Part shown: piece by piece, positions 17,427-24,993 of the stretch | How positions within the stretch are numbered: position 1 is the stretch's first letter | Layout: each line of letters starts with the position of its first letter | Made by a program: the position numbers and the translations under genes | Notes under the pieces: model-generated | Seen by the model: the letters and a program-made list of their open reading frames with translations, nothing else | What the model was told of the DNA's origin: nothing | Database searches by the model: none | NCBI GenBank assembly: GCA_023334545.1 | Contig: JAADVB010000137.1 | Span: 1-50,145 of the forward strand | Length of the DNA: 50,145 bases | Source: Salisapilia sapeloensis CBS 127946 | Lineage: Eukaryota; Protista; Oomycota | Reading direction: 5' to 3'

Positions 17427-18499
17427 GGTATTGATAATAACGAAAGGAAAGGAAATAAATGTCTAGCCGGAAGGTTTACGACGTCGCCTCTTAATAAAGT
17501 GCAGGAGGATTCTCCGGAAGCAAGTTTGCGCCGGAATGGTGGCTCAAGTCGGATGCGAGAGAGCGTGCGAGGGTTGCTCTCGAGTACCAGGAGAGGGGAT
17601 AGGATGGCCAGAGGAACGTAACGGACTGCTCTCCCGCTCGGTCCTCAATTGTAAAAGTGATCGAGCTCCTCTTCGACGCCATGCGAAGTAGCCAATCGTG
17701 TGCGAGCAAGCAGGAGATTGTCTGATCGCAACCGGCGGGACATATCGCACACGGACGTGCCGGACGCTACGAGTGTGGATGCACTTGATGATAGCTAGCA
17801 AACTTCCTTTCTTCCACGCATGAGCCTATCTTCAGTTGGATTGATGAAAGAAGAGGCGACGGCGACTTCAGGAAGCAAAAGAATGCAAAATGGCTGCACG
17901 ATCCACTGTGGCATATGCTACGAAAGCGCTGCAGACGAGCACACGGTTTGTGGGATCGTACGCATCGACAGCTTTTGCCCTGGATGAAAGCGCAAAGCGC
18001 CAGTGTTTCCGTAGAATAAGAATCTAGTGCGGGATACTCAAGTGCTTCTTCTGAAGCGACGCGTGGAAGGCTGCTTCGAAAGTACCCAGATCCAATTTCG
18101 TTCGATCGCAATGCTGACGTAAGGACGGAACAAACTTGCAGGTTAATCCGGTTGCCCGTTGCACTGGTCCTGAAGGCAGTTGGAACGCGTTACAGCGCAG
18201 TGTACGGTGAACTTTGTAAGTAAACGAAGTATGTGCCCTCCATTGCGTGCAAACTGATCCGACCTCGCCAGAGCGTGCACCAAGCTCGTATGTCTCAGTA
18301 GCAACCTTGCATGCAAGTGCCTCCGTAGCTGTCCATGTTCCCTTGTTTAGCCAGGATTGCTCCATCAAAATTGCATCCTTCCATATAGTTAAAGTCCTTT
18401 CGAGTACGTTCAATAAAAGAAGACATCAAATTGAAACCGACTTGGCTCGTGAAACGGGGCACGAACCAATTGATCACTTTACGTGGTCATCCTTGCTCC

Positions 18500-21400
18500 A
18501 TGCCAATGAAAGGCTCGCTCTCACCCGCATCTTCGATATCTTCCGTATCAACACTAGGCAGTCGGAATGAAAGTAGTGTCCGTGTTGCATTGCGAGTACG
18601 ACCTTTCCTGCCCAAGGAAATTGCGGCTCGAGCCAAGTCGTGCTTGGACACCGACACGGGCATGCAGACTGTGCAACTTCGAGGTGGCAGTAGTAAACGC
18701 TTCACGTAAGGCTTTTATCTAGTATTGTGACATGCTCATCTATTGGCATAAGCCTTGCTATGTGCATAATGATGCCATTGCTCTATCAAGATGCCAATGC
18801 TTCCAAAACGGCATGCTGACAATCACTCTGGTGGGATAGATTCGATCATGTATTTCCCTCTTCCACATCTCAATCAGGTACGCACTTTTAGACTACTCTA
18901 TCTTTGCATTTGTAGTTATATCTCTTCAACGTCTGACTGTATGCGCACCTCTTGCTTGCGATCTATAGAGCTGTACGAGACTGCACTCGAGCCATGGCTC
19001 GACTCGTTCCTTCAAGGCTTCAACGTCACTGTGATTGCATATGGGCAGACAGGCTCCGGAAAAACGTTTACGGTCGGTAGCAACAACTTGTCTTCTTTCT
19101 CGCCTCCCTCTACGTCCATCCCAAGTCCCACCTTGTACCAGTTATCGTCTACGGATACTTCTGACTTGTCTGCCAATGCTCACAAGGATGAAGGACTCAT
19201 TCCACGTTTCTTGCGGCAACTATTTGCAAGACTAGACCAGAGCCAGGTAGACGAGAGCTCGTCGGTCGTTAGCGTCAGTGTGTCTTTCCTTGAAATCTAC
19301 GGAGAAGAGATCTTTGACCTGCTGGATGACTCTCGTACGGTCGGCAATGGAAACGCCCATCTCGATCGACTTCAGCTGCGAGAAGGAAAGACAGGAGTCT
19401 ACGTCCTCGGTCTATCCGAAGTCAATGTGTCGAGTCAAGAAGAAGCGCTGGATAAGATGAGAGAAGGTTGTATGCGTCGGATCACAGCTGCAACACGTAT
19501 GAACCAGCACTCGAGTCGCTCTCACGCCGTTTACACGGTCAAGATCGTCCAGCAGACGTCTATTGGCGACAATAACATGCAGAGTAGAGTCGAATCGAAG
19601 CTTACGTTTGTGGATTTAGCCGGTAGCGAACGATTGAAAAAGACTGGAGCAGAGGGAGATCGGATGAAAGAAGGTATCCAGATCAACGTTGGGTTGCTAG
19701 CACTAGGGAACGTAATCAATGCGCTCGGAGACGAAAGGAAGAAGGCAGGACACATCCCATATCGTAGTTCCAAGCTAACTCGTCTCCTACAGGACGCCTT
19801 AGGAGGAAACAGTCGTACATTATTCGTCGCATGTGTATCTCCGACAGAAGAGCAAGTAGCAGAGACGTTGAATACGTTGCAGTATGCGAATCGGGCGAAG
19901 CGTATTCAGAATAAAGCCGTGAAAAACATTGACGAAAGGTCCATGGAGCTCATGCATTTGCAGAGAGCAAAAGAAGTGGTCGAACGGGAATATTTAAAAG
20001 CAAGGTTCTTGAGTCGAATGCCACCAGCAGACGTCGATGCCAAGGTAGAAGAGTTGATGGCGAGTGACGTGGTCACTTCGTTCTTGAGAGCGTTGGAGGA
20101 AGATGCAAGTGAAGGAGGGAACGAGTGGAAGCTTGCGAGCTTTGTGAGTCAAATCCAAAGCCTGGTGCCTGCAGACAACTATGGCCCACCAGTATCAAAC
20201 GACAGCGTATGTCCCATCATGAGCAATACGAGTGACATTGGATCGATGATAAGCACAACAGAGGAGGAAGAGAAGTTTACGATGGCGGAATTACATCAAG
20301 TGGCTCGTGTAATGGACAAAGTGCTAGATGTGGAGGAGACGAGGACAAGGTTTGTCGAGAGAAAGAGTGTGATGGAGAAGACACTTCGTGACTTGCAAGT
20401 CCGTCGACGTCGTAAAGATCAGCTCTTGTCAGCGTTCGTTCGAGCAGTGGAGAAGATGGAGCGACTGATCGAGTCTAGTCCAGCAGATAGTTTGCAAGTG
20501 AAGAACTTGCGCGTGCAGACAGAACGAGGACATGAACGATTGAGCCAGCTCGAGTCAGAGGTGGATCAACTGAATACAGAAGTGGAGAGGATGGAGGTCG
20601 AGTTGGAAGACTTGGTAGACAAGTGTCGAGAAGAATTGGAGCGGAAGGAGACTGAGTTACAGCACGTTCGGCAGATACCAGTAAGTGAGGGCGATGGGAA
20701 CGTCCTGGACTTGATGATGTGGACGCAGGAGATGCAGAGTAAAGGTGATGGTCGACTGCTGGAGATCTCTCAAAAGCTAGACGAGCGAGAGAAGAAGGCT
20801 GCTGCGTATCTGTATGAAGAGGTAGGCGCTGTTGCTCGTCTGCCTTGCTCCCTCATTCCTACGCCTGGGAATCGACAGTCGGAACACGTAATGAGTCAAC
20901 TACGTCAGCTACTCCAGGCATGTACTCTTGTATCATGTTCTAAAGCTCATGTAGCTAAGTATATAACTGTAGACTGCGCTGGATGAAGAGGATTTAGACG
21001 CGACGATTCAGAAACAACTAAGAGAACGCTGTCGATTGCTCTTAGAGTGGTCGTCGAGTTCATATTCGTCAGAGACGGAGGAAAAACTCCAGACGTGTGA
21101 TGATACGATCCAAAGCATTCGAGAGCTGCTTTCTCACTCGGACATGAACTCGACCCAGCTCCAGGCGCTCTTATCTTCTCTCGACTCGGAGACCTTGAAG
21201 GGAGTAGCACAAGGCCTGGTACTGGAAGTTTACAGTCAAATGCGACTGAACTACGCTTCTGTGGATGACTCAGAGTCGTCCGGAGGCTCCACTGACGTTG
21301 TCGGTCCAGAGATGGAAGTGGCGTCGGACAAGACTGATACAGAGGAGCTGCAGACATTGGATATGGTGAATGCGTATGTCAGTGTGCGTAGTTCTCAGGA

Positions 21401-23363
21401 AGCTGAAGTGGATGAACGAGTGTCGTACTGGAGTCATCGATCGCAGCAGCTGGAAGGAGAGATGCTGTCGCTGAAAGAAGAGAAGTGTGGGGTGGAGAGC
21501 AGACTAGAACAGGCTCTGGAAGACAACCAGAGTCTTCGGGAGAAACTGGGTGGACTTGAAAAGCGAGAGGATGCATTAAGTCTACTGAAACGATGTCAGG
21601 AGGTGTGGGAGGAAGTGGGCGTGACGGAAGCTGATCAGCAGCAGAAGTTTCAAGACATCAACGCTGTGCTTGTACAAAAGTGTAGCGAAGAGCTGGAAGG
21701 GCTTCAAGTGGCTCGCGAGCAGCTGCAGAGACGTTTGCAGGAAGGATTGACGATCGTGTCTCGACTGGAAGCAGCGTTGGAAGTAGAAGACGTTTTTGAG
21801 GTAGGACAAGCTCCGTTGCTGGAGCTGGAGAAGCAGGCTCGACGTAAACAGAGCGAACTGGAGGAAGAGGTTTGGAAACGTCTGCATCGACGTGTGCGTA
21901 GTCAGAAGAATGCTGCGGCGTTGATGATGACCATGGAGATCACTCAAGCAGCAGACTTTCGTAGCTCAGCTCCGAACGACTTGGACCTGACACTATTGGA
22001 AGATGAGGCTGTTGTCAAATGGGAAGAGAAGCTTCAGAATGGAGACGCGTCGTCTGTTTTAGTAGATCTGACGGATGCAATGGCGAGTGAGTTCCGAAAG
22101 TTGATCGGATCGAGCTGTTTGGATCAAGTTGAGAGGATGCGCAAGTGTTTGCTGGATGAGAAAGCGTATAGGCTAAGGATACTGGACGACTTGCTGTTTG
22201 ACGTAAGAGAAAAGATGCGATCTCTTGGGTTGCGCCAGTCGGACATGACTTCGCTCATGATTAAACTCTTTCCAGATGAAACCAAAGTCAAGGAATGGGT
22301 GTTGGGTGTCGTGGAGAAGAGCAGTAGTGTTGATGTCACATCAGCAACTTTGGATGCGTTCAGTCATGTAGTAGATAGCTTAGAACATATCATCTCTGGA
22401 CGGAAGGAAGCAAAGAAGGTGGTTAGTGAGATGTTGAACAAGGCGAGTGGAGCGGAGATGGATGTGGACAAGTACGCTTGTCCGCTAATGGTGGAGAATG
22501 AGGCAGTGGATGCAAAGGAGATGAAGCGATGTAAGGAACAGGTGGAGAGTATTGCGAGTGGCGTCGAGTCTGGTGCGAGGATGCTGCTGTATTCACTGTC
22601 AGAAGACTTTGCAGCGTTCGGCATGGATACTTTGCCTCAGCGAATGAGCTTTTTGCTGGGCAGGGAAGAATATGACGAGGATAGTACGAAGCGAAAGGTG
22701 TTGAACAAGTACATGCATGTGATCCAGTCGGACGTGGACGCTCCCATAACTGACGCAGTAGTCTCTTGTCCTTCCTTGCTGTCGGCATTCGATCCACTAC
22801 AGAACGACATTGGTAGCTATTTATCGAAAGAGTACTTGGAGTTGCAAGTCCAGAAGTTGGAGCAAGGAGCGATGGATATGCAGGTGTTGGAGGAGATCCG
22901 TCAGAACGCCCAAACCCGACTGCAGTCTTTACAACAGATCATGCGTTTGTTCCATGAAGCATCTGCCTACAAGAGCAAGATCGAGGAGTTCCAGTCTCAG
23001 ACCAAGAGCAAGGATCGGTTGTTTGGGTCGTCCTTGCGGCTGCTGGAAGAGGAAAAGTTCCGAAAAGCAGCCGCGAAAAAGTATCCTGCTCTGATCCGAC
23101 AGCTAAAGCAGGAAGTGGCCAAGTGGGTGCAGGACGATGAGGAAGAATTTGACTTGAGAGTGCTGGGTAGTGACTTGCAGCAGTTGCTGGAAGACATGAT
23201 GAATGCGAATACTGGGCTGATGCATTTGGATCTGGGCGTAGTGGACACCAAAAGTCGTAAGGGTGGAACGAGAGAACCACAGATGGTGAGACAAGGACAC
23301 AGCGATACGGACAGACTGACGTCGAGACAGTCAAGGTCGAATACACCTCGAGCCAAACCATGA
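18500..23363 (+). CDS. Kinesin-4 (KIF4/KIF21-like) motor fused to a C-terminal PRC1/Ase1/MAP65-like domain, ~1508 aa
   Basis: Proposed exons 18500-18705, 18840-18877, 18969-20821, 20879-20917 and 20973-23363 (4527 nt, phases consistent). Motor motifs VRVALRVRP, FT-FDHVF, YGQTGSGKTFT, SSRSHA, DLAGSERLKKTGAEGDRMKEG and LLQDALGGNSRT. C-terminal half carries CQEVWEEVGV and SKDRLFGSSLRLLEEEKFRKAAAKKYPALIRQLKQEVAKW. Confidence 0.82.
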
Positions 23364-23865
23364 GCGTACAAGTAGAATAAGAACTGATCAATAGCATATA
23401 CAATTGGCATTCACGTTGTCTTGATCTTTGTCGACTTCGTTCGCGGTACAACGTCGGACCAGAAACAGCTACAAAAGTGTCAAGTAGCATTATTGAGAAG
23501 CATCCGATATAGACGAAGAAAGCATGCTCGTATGATGCGTGGCACGTACGCACGAAAATGAATCGAATATTTAAAGTGGATAACGGTAAGGTGTTTTATA
23601 CATCCGACATATCCGCTTCCTGCAAGAAGGGTGCGATGCAATGCTTGCTGACTCAACAAAGCATCTCGTATGTGGTGATTGCGTCTACACTTCCTATATC
23701 GCGCCCACATCTGCATATTGGAGATAAGACACTTGCAAAGCATTGCAAGCAGAGAAACCACATGCCTGTATTCGCAGCCATTTTATCGCATCGAAAGCGT
23801 TCGGTAGGTCTCTTGCTCTGCGTTATAAAAACTCGTCACTTTCGTCTTTGAAGTCACATTGTCAA

Positions 23866-24993
23866 ATGACCTCCCTCTTAGGACCGACGAACAACATGGG
23901 CGGAGACATTGCCATCTATCTCGCAGTTGCGATCGCGTTGATCCTTGCTTGCACCGTGATTATGCTCTGGTGTCGTCGACGCTACCTTCGACAGCTGAAT
24001 TTCGACCCAAGTAGCTCAAAATACAATGCTCCACCTGCATCCGTAGTCGGCGCGGAAGACTTAGCTCGTTACCAAATCGACACCAGCCAGATTCATCTAC
24101 TCACCCAGTTTAACTCCAAAACTCACGGACTCGTTTGGGCAGCGAACTATGTCCATGAACTCGTCGTCGTGAAGCCATTGCAATTGCAAAAGTATGATGC
24201 AAATGCACGACGGAAAGTATTGGATCGTGTCACACAGCTCGCTTTGATATCTCATATCAAGGTCGTACAATTCATCGGCGTTTCTTGGACCACCGAGCTA
24301 GATTTCCACATCATTCTGGAACATGTGCCTCGAGGCGACATCGAAAGCTGTCTGTCGTTTACTCATGCAAACGCACTTGCGACCGAATGGGGTGAGCGGA
24401 AACTTCGGATTGCTAGCGACATTGCAGAGGCACTCGCCCACCTTCACTCGCTCAAGCCGCGCATTTACCATACGAACTTGAGGGCTCGCAACATTCTCAT
24501 CGACCACTCCTGGGGTGCAAAGATATCTATGTTCAGCTTCCAAAATTCCAACGACCAGATCTTGTCTCATCTTGACGGCAGCAGCCGATGGATAGCGCCA
24601 GAAATGCTAACTGCAAATGCGTCGAGCGAAAGCATGGCGAGTACAGCTGTTGATGTCTACGCATTTGGAGCAGTGATGCTAGAGCTTGACTCGCATGACG
24701 TTCCGTTCTATGATGCCTTATCTTCAACTGGGAAACCTCTCAGTGAGCGCGAGATGCGAGATCTACTTTCCAAGGGTTCATTGCAACCTTCGATCTGTGA
24801 AACGTGTCCGCCTGAACTGGCAGAGCTCATTGCCGATTGCCTTCAAGTTGATCCCACGAAACGACCTAGTGCACCTCGACTCGCGCATGATATTCGACAG
24901 TTGGTTGAAACCGTGCATGACAAGAGTTTGGTCAATGTCAGCGAGGTCAGTCTCATTAATTCCTTCACTGGGGAAACTGTATCTCAGCTATAG
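23866..24993 (+). CDS. Single-pass TKL-family protein kinase-like protein, probable pseudokinase, ~375 aa
   Basis: N-terminal TM (IAIYLAVAIALILACTVIMLW) followed by RRR. Kinase fold landmarks VVVK, VQFIGVSW, IAEALAHLHS, WIAPE, DVYAFG and DCLQVDPTKRP, but HRD is HTN and DFG is MFS. Confidence 0.85.
   Translation: MTSLLGPTNNMGGDIAIYLAVAIALILACTVIMLWCRRRYLRQLNFDPSSSKYNAPPASVVGAEDLARYQIDTSQIHLLTQFNSKTHGLVWAANYVHELVVVKPLQLQKYDANARRKVLDRVTQLALISHIKVVQFIGVSWTTELDFHIILEHVPRGDIESCLSFTHANALATEWGERKLRIASDIAEALAHLHSLKPRIYHTNLRARNILIDHSWGAKISMFSFQNSNDQILSHLDGSSRWIAPEMLTANASSESMASTAVDVYAFGAVMLELDSHDVPFYDALSSTGKPLSEREMRDLLSKGSLQPSICETCPPELAELIADCLQVDPTKRPSAPRLAHDIRQLVETVHDKSLVNVSEVSLINSFTGETVSQL

What the first reader, a model, noticed from the sequence alone, without database searches (positions are those of the whole stretch)
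18500..23363. Apparent kinesin-4 / PRC1(MAP65/Ase1) fusion: a single-chain spindle-midzone module
Seen in sequence: the two long track ORFs (18791-20986, 21036-23363) join in phase through short introns, and the downstream frame opens exactly at the AG acceptor 20971-20972. The first ORF otherwise ends in a junk tail, and there is no intergenic space for a second promoter. The N-terminus is a kinesin-4-type motor. The C-terminal ~600 aa carries CQEVWEEVGVTEADQ (~21590-21640), resembling the PRC1 N-terminal dimerisation start LQEIWELIGIPEDQR. It also carries EFQSQTKSKDRLFGSSLRLLEEEKFRKAAAKKYPALIRQLKQEVAKW (~22985-23130), resembling the spectrin-like microtubule-binding core of PRC1 and Ase1 (R..LL.EEK.R...K..P.L...LK...W; reference sequences recalled from memory). 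Established knowledge: in vertebrates PRC1 recruits KIF4A to antiparallel overlaps to set midzone length, and plant MAP65 and kinesin-4 act together similarly, as separate proteins. Inference: here the motor and cross-linker are one polypeptide, a Rosetta-stone fusion that may act as a self-contained slider and overlap-length controller. I cannot tell whether this architecture is already catalogued in other oomycetes.
Basis: partly seen in the sequence, partly recalled or inferred. Interest (0 to 1): 0.82.

Follow-up and report, generated by a model that had tools for sequence, protein, structure and literature searches.

The report
Kinesin-4 fused to MAP65/PRC1 cross-linker
This oomycete gene really does encode one 1527-residue protein joining a kinesin-4 motor to a complete PRC1/MAP65/Ase1 microtubule cross-linker, two proteins that work as separate partners in animals and plants, and the same fusion is conserved across oomycetes and in diatoms although I found no paper describing it.

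Summary
The two long ORFs belong to one four-exon gene (18500-23363, + strand). RNA contigs from four runs join them in frame through a 55-nt GC-AG intron (20918-20972). The GT at 20822 is not used, and 20822-20917 is conserved coding sequence.

The 1527-aa product has three parts:
- an intact kinesin motor, closest to KIF4, KIF7 and KIF21;
- a stalk of about 520 aa;
- a complete MAP65/Ase1/PRC1 module of about 600 aa.

The MAP65 assignment rests on several tests. Pfam PF03999 scores above its threshold. Profile-profile comparison gives probability 99.8% over 497 columns. The predicted fold matches only PRC1 in the PDB. The 14 best Swiss-Prot models are all MAP65, Ase1, PRC1 or S. pombe Mcp1.

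The fusion is not peculiar to this genome. Full-length colinear orthologues occur in Phytophthora, Lagenidium, Globisporangium, Peronospora, Pythium, Aphanomyces and Achlya. Related fused proteins occur in diatoms, in a bolidophyte, and as uninterrupted ORFs in metagenomes. Public databases hold these proteins under generic names, and I found no paper on the architecture.

A role in sliding antiparallel microtubules and controlling overlap length is inferred, not shown. RNA did not cover the 5' exons.

The parts
18500..18705 (+). Exon 1: start codon and the N-terminal strands of the kinesin motor (VRVALRVRPF...KRFT)
   Evidence: Sequence, translation and alignment to orthologues. No RNA contig covers it.
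18706..18839 (+). Intron 1, GT-AG, 134 nt
   Evidence: Inferred from homology: joining the exons restores the kinesin motif FTFDHVF. Not shown by RNA.
18840..18877 (+). Exon 2, 38 nt (FDHVFPSSTSQS)
18878..18968 (+). Intron 2, GT-AG, 91 nt
   Evidence: Inferred from homology. Two RNA contigs begin inside it at 18906 and 18953, so it is partly retained in them.
18969..20917 (+). Exon 3: the rest of the motor (P-loop, switch I, switch II, neck up to about 19913) and the first part of the stalk.
   Evidence: Pfam PF00225, E 5.9e-93. Motifs located. RNA contigs are continuous across it. Orthologue alignment across 20822-20917.
20918..20972 (+). Intron 3, GC-AG, 55 nt: the join between the two long ORFs
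   Evidence: A skip of 55 nt is seen in contigs of all four runs. The intron ends read GCATGT...TGTAG. The join is in frame, phase 0.
20973..23363 (+). Exon 4: the second part of the stalk, the full MAP65/Ase1/PRC1 module and the stop codon (23361-23363)
21540..23210 (+). Folded part of the MAP65/Ase1/PRC1-like module: N-terminal helical hairpin, rod and spectrin-like microtubule-binding domain (protein residues 921-1477)
   Evidence: hhalign of A1 against A2: probability 99.8%, E 1.2e-27, 497 columns. AlphaFold model with mean pLDDT 77. Foldseek finds only PRC1 entries 4L6Y and 4L3I below E 0.001. The 14 best Swiss-Prot models are all MAP65, Ase1, PRC1 or Mcp1.
21594..21638 (+). CQEVWEEVGVTEADQ, at the start of the PRC1-like dimerisation hairpin
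   Evidence: C, Q and G are invariant among 9 oomycete orthologues. It aligns to the N-terminus of MAP65 proteins.
22986..23126 (+). EFQSQTKSKDRLFGSSLRLLEEEKFRKAAAKKYPALIRQLKQEVAKW, the core helices of the spectrin-like microtubule-binding domain
   Evidence: Best Pfam PF03999 stretch. It aligns to the PRC1 spectrin domain of 5KMG and 3NRX, EFERKASDPNRF..LLKEEKQR. It is the most conserved block in the family.
23211..23360 (+). Basic C-terminal tail predicted to be disordered (10 K+R and 10 S+T in 49 aa; one TP site)
   Evidence: pLDDT below 50 for model residues 559-607. Composition.

Best explanation
One gene (18500-23363, + strand; 4 exons, 3 short introns) encodes a 1527-aa polypeptide. It contains an N-terminal, catalytically intact, plus-end-type kinesin motor of the kinesin-4 (KIF4/7/21/27) group, a stalk of about 520 aa, and a complete MAP65/Ase1/PRC1 module. 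That module has a dimerisation hairpin, a rod, a spectrin-like microtubule-binding domain and a basic disordered tail. The architecture, its expression as a spliced in-frame transcript and its conservation are shown here.

The gene is the local orthologue of a fused family present in all sampled oomycete orders and in diatoms and bolidophytes. The fusion therefore most likely arose once, before these stramenopile lineages split.

The mechanism is inferred. The MAP65 module would dimerise tail-to-tail and select antiparallel microtubule overlaps, as PRC1 and Ase1 do. The covalently attached motor would walk to plus ends. In doing so it could push the cross-linked antiparallel microtubules apart, and it could collect at overlap ends and limit their growth. 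One chain would then do what the PRC1-KIF4A pair does as two proteins. The likely sites of action are the intranuclear spindle midzone and possibly interphase antiparallel overlaps between nuclei in coenocytic hyphae.
For: Gene structure:
- In-frame 55-nt GC-AG splice in contigs of 4 RNA runs; one contig spans 19072-23405.
- The spliced CDS is 4584 nt with no internal stop.

Conservation:
- Single-HSP colinear BLAST over residues about 20-1490 to proteins of 1450-1770 aa from Lagenidium, Phytophthora ramorum and P. infestans, Bremia, Plasmopara, Globisporangium, Peronospora, Aphanomyces, Achlya and Saprolegnia.
- The junction region itself aligns with orthologues.
- Short 'stand-alone' hits are split gene models with kinesin pieces just upstream on the same strand.
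- Uninterrupted ORFs encode Kinesin plus MAP65 in metagenome contigs L001 and L003.
- Chaetoceros carries Kinesin, KIF21A_4th and MAP65. The Thalassiosira C-terminus matches at hhalign probability 97.3%. Triparma matches by BLAST.

Motor:
- PF00225, E 6e-93.
- GQTGSGKT, SSRSH and DLAGSE are intact.
- Best PDB hits are KIF4 and KIF7.
- Nearest named homologues are KIF4/21/27 and KIN-4.
- In the tree, fused motors from oomycetes, diatoms and the bolidophyte group together at SH-aLRT 88, apart from unfused kinesin-4s.

MAP65 module: evidence.

Background on the two-protein system: Bieling 2010 and Subramanian 2013 as cited in PMC5192431; PMC6200392 and PMC10316633 (titles and abstracts).
Against: - No RNA contig covers exons 1-2 (18481-18842), and two contigs start inside intron 2. 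A full-length mRNA carrying the whole motor is therefore inferred from homology, not shown.
- Contigs are assemblies, not single molecules.
- In 3 of 4 runs the contig breaks near 21565-21603, and depth roughly doubles 3' of that point. This could be 3' bias or a shorter 3' transcript.
- The kinesin-4 stalk domain PF25764 is not detected in the oomycete proteins.
- The grouping of all fused motors is only moderately supported, and one fused protein on a long branch (P0027) falls outside it.
- Nothing here tests localisation, motility, oligomeric state or antiparallel selectivity.
Confidence: 0.8

Rival explanations
1. These are two adjacent genes, a kinesin and a stand-alone MAP65. They appear joined only through read-through transcription or assembly of overlapping transcripts.
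For: The contigs are de Bruijn assemblies. Depth differs between the 5' and 3' parts in three runs, with a break near 21580. Several database entries are stand-alone MAP65-only proteins of about 600-900 aa.
Against: The only stop between the ORFs lies inside an intron that is removed in all four runs, leaving one frame. There is no in-frame Met near the start of the MAP65 module. Orthologues align colinearly across the junction. The 'stand-alone' entries that were checked have kinesin pieces directly upstream on the same strand, or have members of about 1700 aa in their cluster. Other taxa encode both domains in one uninterrupted ORF.
Confidence: 0.03
2. The C-terminal half is a generic coiled-coil kinesin tail, and the PRC1 resemblance is a chance or compositional match.
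For: phmmer against the PDB found nothing. A family profile hits the PRC1 spectrin domain only at E about 0.1. The Pfam score is modest at 30 bits. Identity to PRC1 is 13-14%.
Against: The Pfam score is above the gathering cut-off here and in many orthologues, reaching 62 bits across the whole model in P0027. hhalign gives probability 99.8%, E 1e-27, over 497 columns against proteins that score 100-150 bits on PF03999. Foldseek finds only PRC1 below E 0.001 in the PDB. The 14 best Swiss-Prot hits are MAP65, Ase1, PRC1 or Mcp1, aligned from their N-termini, with a clear gap to the next hit.
Confidence: 0.02
3. The fusion is real, but its main job is not the mitotic midzone. It could organise interphase antiparallel overlaps that space nuclei in coenocytic hyphae. 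Alternatively it could act mainly as a passive brake or bundler, with the motor serving only to target plus ends.
For: A Phytophthora preprint reports antiparallel overlaps between microtubules of neighbouring nuclei and proposes MAP65-type cross-linkers for nuclear positioning (10.1101/2025.10.02.679959). Kinesin-4 and MAP65 also act in interphase arrays in moss (PMC10316633, abstract).
Against: No localisation or expression-timing data were obtained here. Conservation in unicellular diatoms, which are not coenocytic, argues for a more general role that includes the spindle.
Confidence: 0.2

Closest known systems
Vertebrate PRC1-KIF4A (Xklp1) midzone module
   Same: The same two protein families are involved. 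The window protein carries a kinesin-4-type motor and a full PRC1-like module, comprising a dimerisation hairpin, a rod, a spectrin-like domain and a basic tail.
   Different: In vertebrates these are two separate polypeptides that bind non-covalently, and recruitment is regulated. Here they form one chain with fixed 1:1 stoichiometry. The usual KIF4 C-terminal cargo and chromatin-binding tail is replaced by the MAP65 module. The oligomeric state is unknown.
Plant MAP65 with kinesin-4 (moss Kin4; PMC10316633)
   Same: A MAP65 cross-linker at antiparallel overlaps and a kinesin-4 that limits microtubule growth there. The Swiss-Prot structural hits are led by Arabidopsis MAP65-4, -9, -5, -3 and -6.
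   Different: The plant proteins are separate. Sequence identity of the module to plant MAP65 is only 13-15%.
Orthologous fused proteins in public databases, for example Phytophthora ramorum XP_067740127.1 'Chromosome-associated kinesin KIF4B', Achlya hypogyna OQR93907.1, Saprolegnia parasitica SPRG_20873, Albugo laibachii F0W936 and Chaetoceros tenuissimus 'kinesin family member 4/21/27'
   Same: The same domain order and colinear alignment over the whole length for the oomycete proteins. Several already carry both PF00225 and PF03999 in precomputed annotation.
   Different: The window protein is only 30-38% identical to them overall, so it comes from a lineage not represented in those databases. 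The diatom versions keep a KIF21A_4th stalk domain that is not detectable here. None is described in any paper I could find.
Yeast Ase1 with kinesin-6 Klp9 or kinesin-5
   Same: A motor recruited to an Ase1-marked midzone to slide antiparallel microtubules. S. pombe and S. cerevisiae Ase1 are among the structural matches.
   Different: The motor family differs, the proteins are separate, and recruitment is controlled by phosphorylation.

Membership tests
Kinesin superfamily | Motor domain with P-loop GQTxxGKT/S, switch I SSRSH and switch II DxxGxE | tested here: met
   PF00225, E 5.9e-93. GQTGSGKT at residue 107, SSRSH at 263 and DLAGSE at 297.
Kinesin-4 (KIF4/7/21/27) | Motor domain groups with kinesin-4 members rather than with other kinesin families | tested here: met
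   Best PDB hits are KIF4 (239 bits) and KIF7 (234 bits), against KIF3B (212) and KIF11 (203). All nearest named homologues of the orthologue are KIF4, KIF21, KIF27 or KIN-4. The tree holds kinesin-4-group sequences only, so there is no formal test against other families.
Kinesin-4 (KIF4/7/21/27) | Family-typical stalk domain (Pfam PF25764 KIF21A_4th) | tested here: inconclusive
   No Pfam hit in the window protein at E up to 1. hhalign of the oomycete stalk against the diatom and animal domain gives only 47% probability over 51 columns. The domain is present in the diatom fused proteins.
Kinesin-4 (chromokinesin KIF4 subtype) | C-terminal Cys-rich, chromatin- and PRC1-binding tail | tested here: not met
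   The C-terminus is a MAP65 module instead. This protein is not a KIF4-type chromokinesin in its tail.
MAP65/Ase1/PRC1 | Match to Pfam PF03999 above the gathering threshold | tested here: met
   30.2 bits against a cut-off of 26.9, E 2.6e-7. Orthologues score 33-62 bits.
MAP65/Ase1/PRC1 | Homology over the whole protein, from the N-terminal dimerisation region through the rod to the spectrin-like domain | tested here: met
   hhalign: 497 columns, probability 99.8%, E 1.2e-27. Foldseek alignments start at residues 1-25 of MAP65, PRC1 and Ase1 and run to about 510-550. PRC1 4L6Y gives TM 0.57-0.59 normalised by target.
MAP65/Ase1/PRC1 | Conserved basic helix motif of the spectrin-like microtubule-binding domain | tested here: met
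   KDRLFGSSLRLLEEEKFRK aligns to PRC1 DPNRFTNRGGNLLKEEKQR in 5KMG and 3NRX. R, L, EEE, F, R and K are invariant in 9 orthologues.
MAP65/Ase1/PRC1 | Basic, disordered C-terminal tail | tested here: met
   pLDDT below 50 for the last 49 residues. The tail has 10 K+R against 5 D+E.
MAP65/Ase1/PRC1 | Homodimerisation and selective cross-linking of antiparallel microtubules | not testable with these tools
   This needs biochemistry.

The most novel reading that the evidence does not exclude
The fused kinesin-4-MAP65 may be the only MAP65 of oomycetes and diatoms. It may also be the long-sought kinesin that sits in the midzone 'matrix' of the stramenopile central spindle and drives or limits anaphase-B sliding. 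A 2016 review speculated that the kinesin-anchoring matrix of diatom spindles may comprise Ase1 (PMC5192431). Combining a parallel stalk dimer with an antiparallel MAP65 dimer could build bipolar tetramers or chains. That would be a route to a kinesin-5-like slider that evolved independently.
Probability: 0.2. Interest if true: 0.85.

Novelty: new variant of a known kind. Interest (0 to 1): 0.62.

Why it matters
PRC1/MAP65 and kinesin-4 form the textbook minimal module that builds antiparallel microtubule overlaps and sets their length. A natural covalent fusion of the two, kept across oomycetes and diatoms, is independent evolutionary evidence that the partnership is ancient.

It also offers a ready-made single-chain version for reconstitution. 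Such experiments can ask how fixed 1:1 coupling changes sliding, braking and overlap length.

It gives a concrete candidate for the unidentified midzone motor and matrix of the diatom central spindle, a classic anaphase-B model. It likewise gives a candidate for the antiparallel overlaps recently described in Phytophthora hyphae.

Because the architecture is absent from the plant and animal homologues recovered here, it also marks a lineage-specific feature of oomycete cell division.

Tried and rejected
- phmmer of the C-terminal piece against PDB sequences found nothing.
- The word-indexed homologue search with the 796-aa piece found nothing. This reflects the tool's length window and coiled-coil word noise, because the exhaustive search then found 61 relatives.
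- A profile of 9 orthologues against the PDB gave only E about 0.1 for the PRC1 spectrin domain. That is too weak alone, but the alignment is the expected one.
RNA and orthologues both read through.
- The KIF21A_4th domain in the oomycete stalk was not demonstrable.
- The C-terminus of the labyrinthulomycete Hondaea kinesin-4 shows no MAP65 similarity, so the fusion is not universal in stramenopiles.
- I looked for a stand-alone oomycete MAP65. None appeared among named hits, and the short hits proved to be split models. This was not a proteome-wide test.
- The bacterial-type promoter scan upstream is irrelevant to a eukaryote and found nothing.
- Seidl et al. 2011, on oomycete domain combinations, is not held. 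Six literature searches found no description of the fusion.
Full report
**Observation**

The frame of the second ORF extends upstream to a TAG at 20970-20972, so it opens exactly after the AG at 20971-20972. CQEVWEEVGVTEADQ starts at 21594, and EFQSQ...EVAKW spans 22986-23126.

**Gene structure**

Reading upstream, the kinesin motor starts at ATG 18500. Two short GT-AG introns (18706-18839 and 18878-18968) restore the classic kinesin N-terminus ...RVRPF...KRFTFDHVFPSSTSQSELYE.... This N-terminus aligns residue for residue with oomycete orthologues.

Contigs from four public RNA runs (three samples, one study) were laid on 18300-23700. In every run a contig crosses the ORF1/ORF2 boundary with one skip of 55 nt. 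With the stated 2-nt ambiguity this skip is 20918-20972, a GC-AG intron. In run X3 a single contig of 4279 nt runs from 19072 to 23405. The contigs do not skip 20822-20917, so the GT donor at 20822 is not used.

Exon 3 ends at 20917 in phase 0 and exon 4 starts at 20973 in the frame of ORF2. The four exons give a 4584-nt CDS and a 1527-aa product with no internal stop. The retained 32 codons align with orthologues...SLFxK...LQxALDxEDLEASL.KELRKR.... Coverage ends about 30-40 nt after the stop codon. An upstream neighbour's transcript ends near 18401-18415.

Two caveats apply.
- No RNA contig covers 18481-18842, and two contigs begin inside intron 2. Exons 1-2 and their splicing therefore rest on homology.
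- In three runs the contig breaks at about 21565-21603, and depth is roughly doubled 3' of that point.

**The motor**

Pfam gives PF00225 at E 5.9e-93. The P-loop, switch I, switch II and the neck motif are intact. The best solved structures by sequence are KIF4 (239 bits) and KIF7 (234 bits), ahead of KIF3B (212) and KIF11 (203). The nearest named homologues of the Lagenidium orthologue's motor are all KIF4, KIF21, KIF27 or KIN-4. I did not run a phylogeny against all kinesin families. The kinesin-4 stalk domain PF25764 is not detectable in the oomycete proteins, although it is present in the diatom relatives.

**The C-terminal half**

Five lines of evidence identify it as a MAP65/Ase1/PRC1 module.
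- Pfam PF03999 (MAP65_ASE1) scores 30.2 bits against a cut-off of 26.9, with its best stretch on the spectrin-like region.
- A language-model feature search returned MAP65 clusters for 59 of 100 hits.
- I aligned the last 600-680 residues of nine oomycete orthologues (A1). I compared this by hhalign with an alignment of eight stand-alone proteins (A2). Five of those score 100-150 bits on PF03999. They come from Dictyostelium, a rotifer and metagenomes. The result was probability 99.8%, E 1.2e-27, over 497 aligned columns running from the RCQeiWeELG start to the LMHLdL end.
- An AlphaFold model of the 607-residue module (mean pLDDT 77, all-helical, disordered last 49 residues) was searched against the PDB. 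Only four chains scored below E 0.001, and all were full-length PRC1 (4L6Y and 4L3I; E 9e-6 to 5e-5; TM 0.56-0.59 by target). The next hit was at E 0.15.
- Against Swiss-Prot models, the 14 best hits are Arabidopsis MAP65-1 to -9, S. pombe and S. cerevisiae Ase1, human and mouse PRC1, and S. pombe Mcp1. Thirteen are aligned from their first 25 residues and S. cerevisiae Ase1 from residue 78. There is a gap of three orders of magnitude to the next hit.

A family profile aligns EFeasasqkdRLfgsSLrLLEEEkFRk to PRC1 EFERKASDPNRFTNRGGNLLKEEKQR in 5KMG and 3NRX, although that search alone is not significant at E 0.1.

**Conservation of the fusion**

An exhaustive HMMER search of 1.84 billion representative proteins with the 796-aa exon-4 product found 61 relatives. 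The strongest include proteins of 1452-1696 aa that match in their C-terminal halves. Pfam finds a kinesin motor at the N-terminus of each. They come from Pythium oligandrum, Phytophthora ramorum (one entry is named 'Chromosome-associated kinesin KIF4B'), Lagenidium giganteum, Aphanomyces stellatus and Achlya hypogyna.

The spliced window protein aligns colinearly, mostly as a single BLAST HSP covering residues about 20-1490, to the following:
- Lagenidium;
- P. ramorum and P. infestans;
- Bremia and Plasmopara;
- Globisporangium and Peronospora;
- Aphanomyces, Achlya and Saprolegnia.

A further search lists the same family in many Phytophthora species and in Albugo laibachii and A. candida. 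Some entries already carry both PF00225 and PF03999 in precomputed annotation.

The shorter MAP65-only hits are split gene models, as three checks show.
- Their clusters contain members of about 1700 aa.
- In Pythium insidiosum a kinesin gene lies 2 kb upstream on the same strand.
- A metagenome contig shows kinesin pieces, stalk pieces and the MAP65 piece in a row.

**Beyond oomycetes**

- Two metagenome contigs encode kinesin plus MAP65 in one uninterrupted ORF, of 1233 aa and 2473 aa. This excludes gene-model artefacts.
- The diatom Chaetoceros tenuissimus has Kinesin, KIF21A_4th and MAP65 in 1861 aa.
- The C-terminus of the Thalassiosira 1826-aa kinesin-4 matches the oomycete module at hhalign probability 97.3%, E 2e-11, including the spectrin motif.
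- The bolidophyte Triparma matches by BLAST.
- The labyrinthulomycete Hondaea kinesin-4 does not match.

In a quick maximum-likelihood tree of motor domains, the oomycete fused motors form a clade (SH-aLRT 98) that contains the window protein. Together with the diatom, bolidophyte and brown-alga sequences and two metagenome sequences they form one group (SH-aLRT 88). This group is separate from animal KIF4A and KIF21A, fungal kinesin-4s, Hondaea, and a second, unfused oomycete kinesin-4 paralogue. One long-branch fused protein (P0027) falls outside it. A single old fusion is therefore likely but not proven. I saw no stand-alone MAP65 among named hits, but this was not a proteome-wide test.

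**Which organism**

The window protein is 35-38% identical overall to the peronosporalean, pythialean and Lagenidium orthologues, and 32% identical to the Saprolegniales orthologues. It is even more distant from Albugo in the C-terminal half. No close copy was in the protein libraries. The window thus comes from an oomycete lineage not represented there. The tree places it on the peronosporalean side, weakly next to Albugo.

**Mechanism (inferred)**

In vertebrates, PRC1 dimers mark antiparallel overlaps and recruit kinesin-4, which limits plus-end growth and can drive relative sliding. The sources are Bieling 2010 and Subramanian 2013 as cited in PMC5192431, and PMC6200392 (abstract). Moss MAP65 and Kin4 cooperate similarly (PMC10316633, abstract).

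Here the two activities sit on one chain. The MAP65 module would supply antiparallel selectivity and a second microtubule-binding site. The motor would supply plus-end-directed stepping. A molecule bound by its spectrin-like domain to one microtubule and walking on the antiparallel neighbour would push the minus ends apart. Accumulation at plus ends would cap overlap growth. How a parallel stalk dimer combines with an antiparallel MAP65 dimer (as a dimer, a tetramer or chains) is unknown.

**Novelty**

Six full-text searches found no paper describing a kinesin-MAP65 fusion. A 2025 Phytophthora preprint says only that MAP65/PRC1/Ase1 is conserved in oomycetes and has not been studied there. [quoted passage not shown]

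The architecture is visible in public protein databases under generic names. The window gene is therefore a new, divergent member of an uncharacterised but catalogued family. As a system, it is a new variant of the known PRC1-kinesin-4 module.

Noticed in passing
window 21565-21603: In three of four RNA runs the transcript contig breaks here, exactly where the MAP65 module begins. Contig depth is about twice as high on the 3' side (24.9 against 12, 18.5 against 9.2, 16.1 against 9.6). Run X3 reads through in one contig. This could be 3' bias or a shorter 3' transcript. There is no in-frame ATG nearby.
   Followed up: partly
window 18481-18968: No RNA contig covers exons 1-2 of the kinesin, and two contigs start inside intron 2 at 18906 and 18953. 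An in-frame ATG at 18941 would give a motor lacking its first 81 or so residues. Unspliced pre-mRNA or low 5' coverage seems more likely.
   Followed up: partly
window 19085-19200 (protein residues about 117-155): A Ser/Pro/Thr-rich insertion of about 35 residues follows the P-loop helix of the motor, in the loop-5 position. Orthologues from Phytophthora, Peronospora, Globisporangium, Pythium oligandrum and Lagenidium share it; Aphanomyces and Achlya lack it.
   Followed up: no
window 18300-18415: A highly expressed neighbouring transcript (contig depth 60-112, contigs of about 3.3 kb) ends only about 85-100 nt before the kinesin start codon. The kinesin 3' UTR is only about 30-40 nt. Gene spacing here is very compact.
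   Followed up: no
L004 (Pythium insidiosum), L005 and the contig of P0073: A nucleotide-sugar transporter gene (UAA/TPT family) lies tail-to-tail immediately downstream of the fused gene in P. insidiosum and in two metagenome contigs. In the window the downstream gene is instead a kinase-like ORF (23743-24993), so local synteny is not kept.
   Followed up: no
P0098 (Nothophytophthora) and P0099 (Aphanomyces stellatus, 1627 aa): BLAST shows two separate kinesin motor matches within each of these proteins. They are either tandem-motor kinesins or merged gene models.
   Followed up: no
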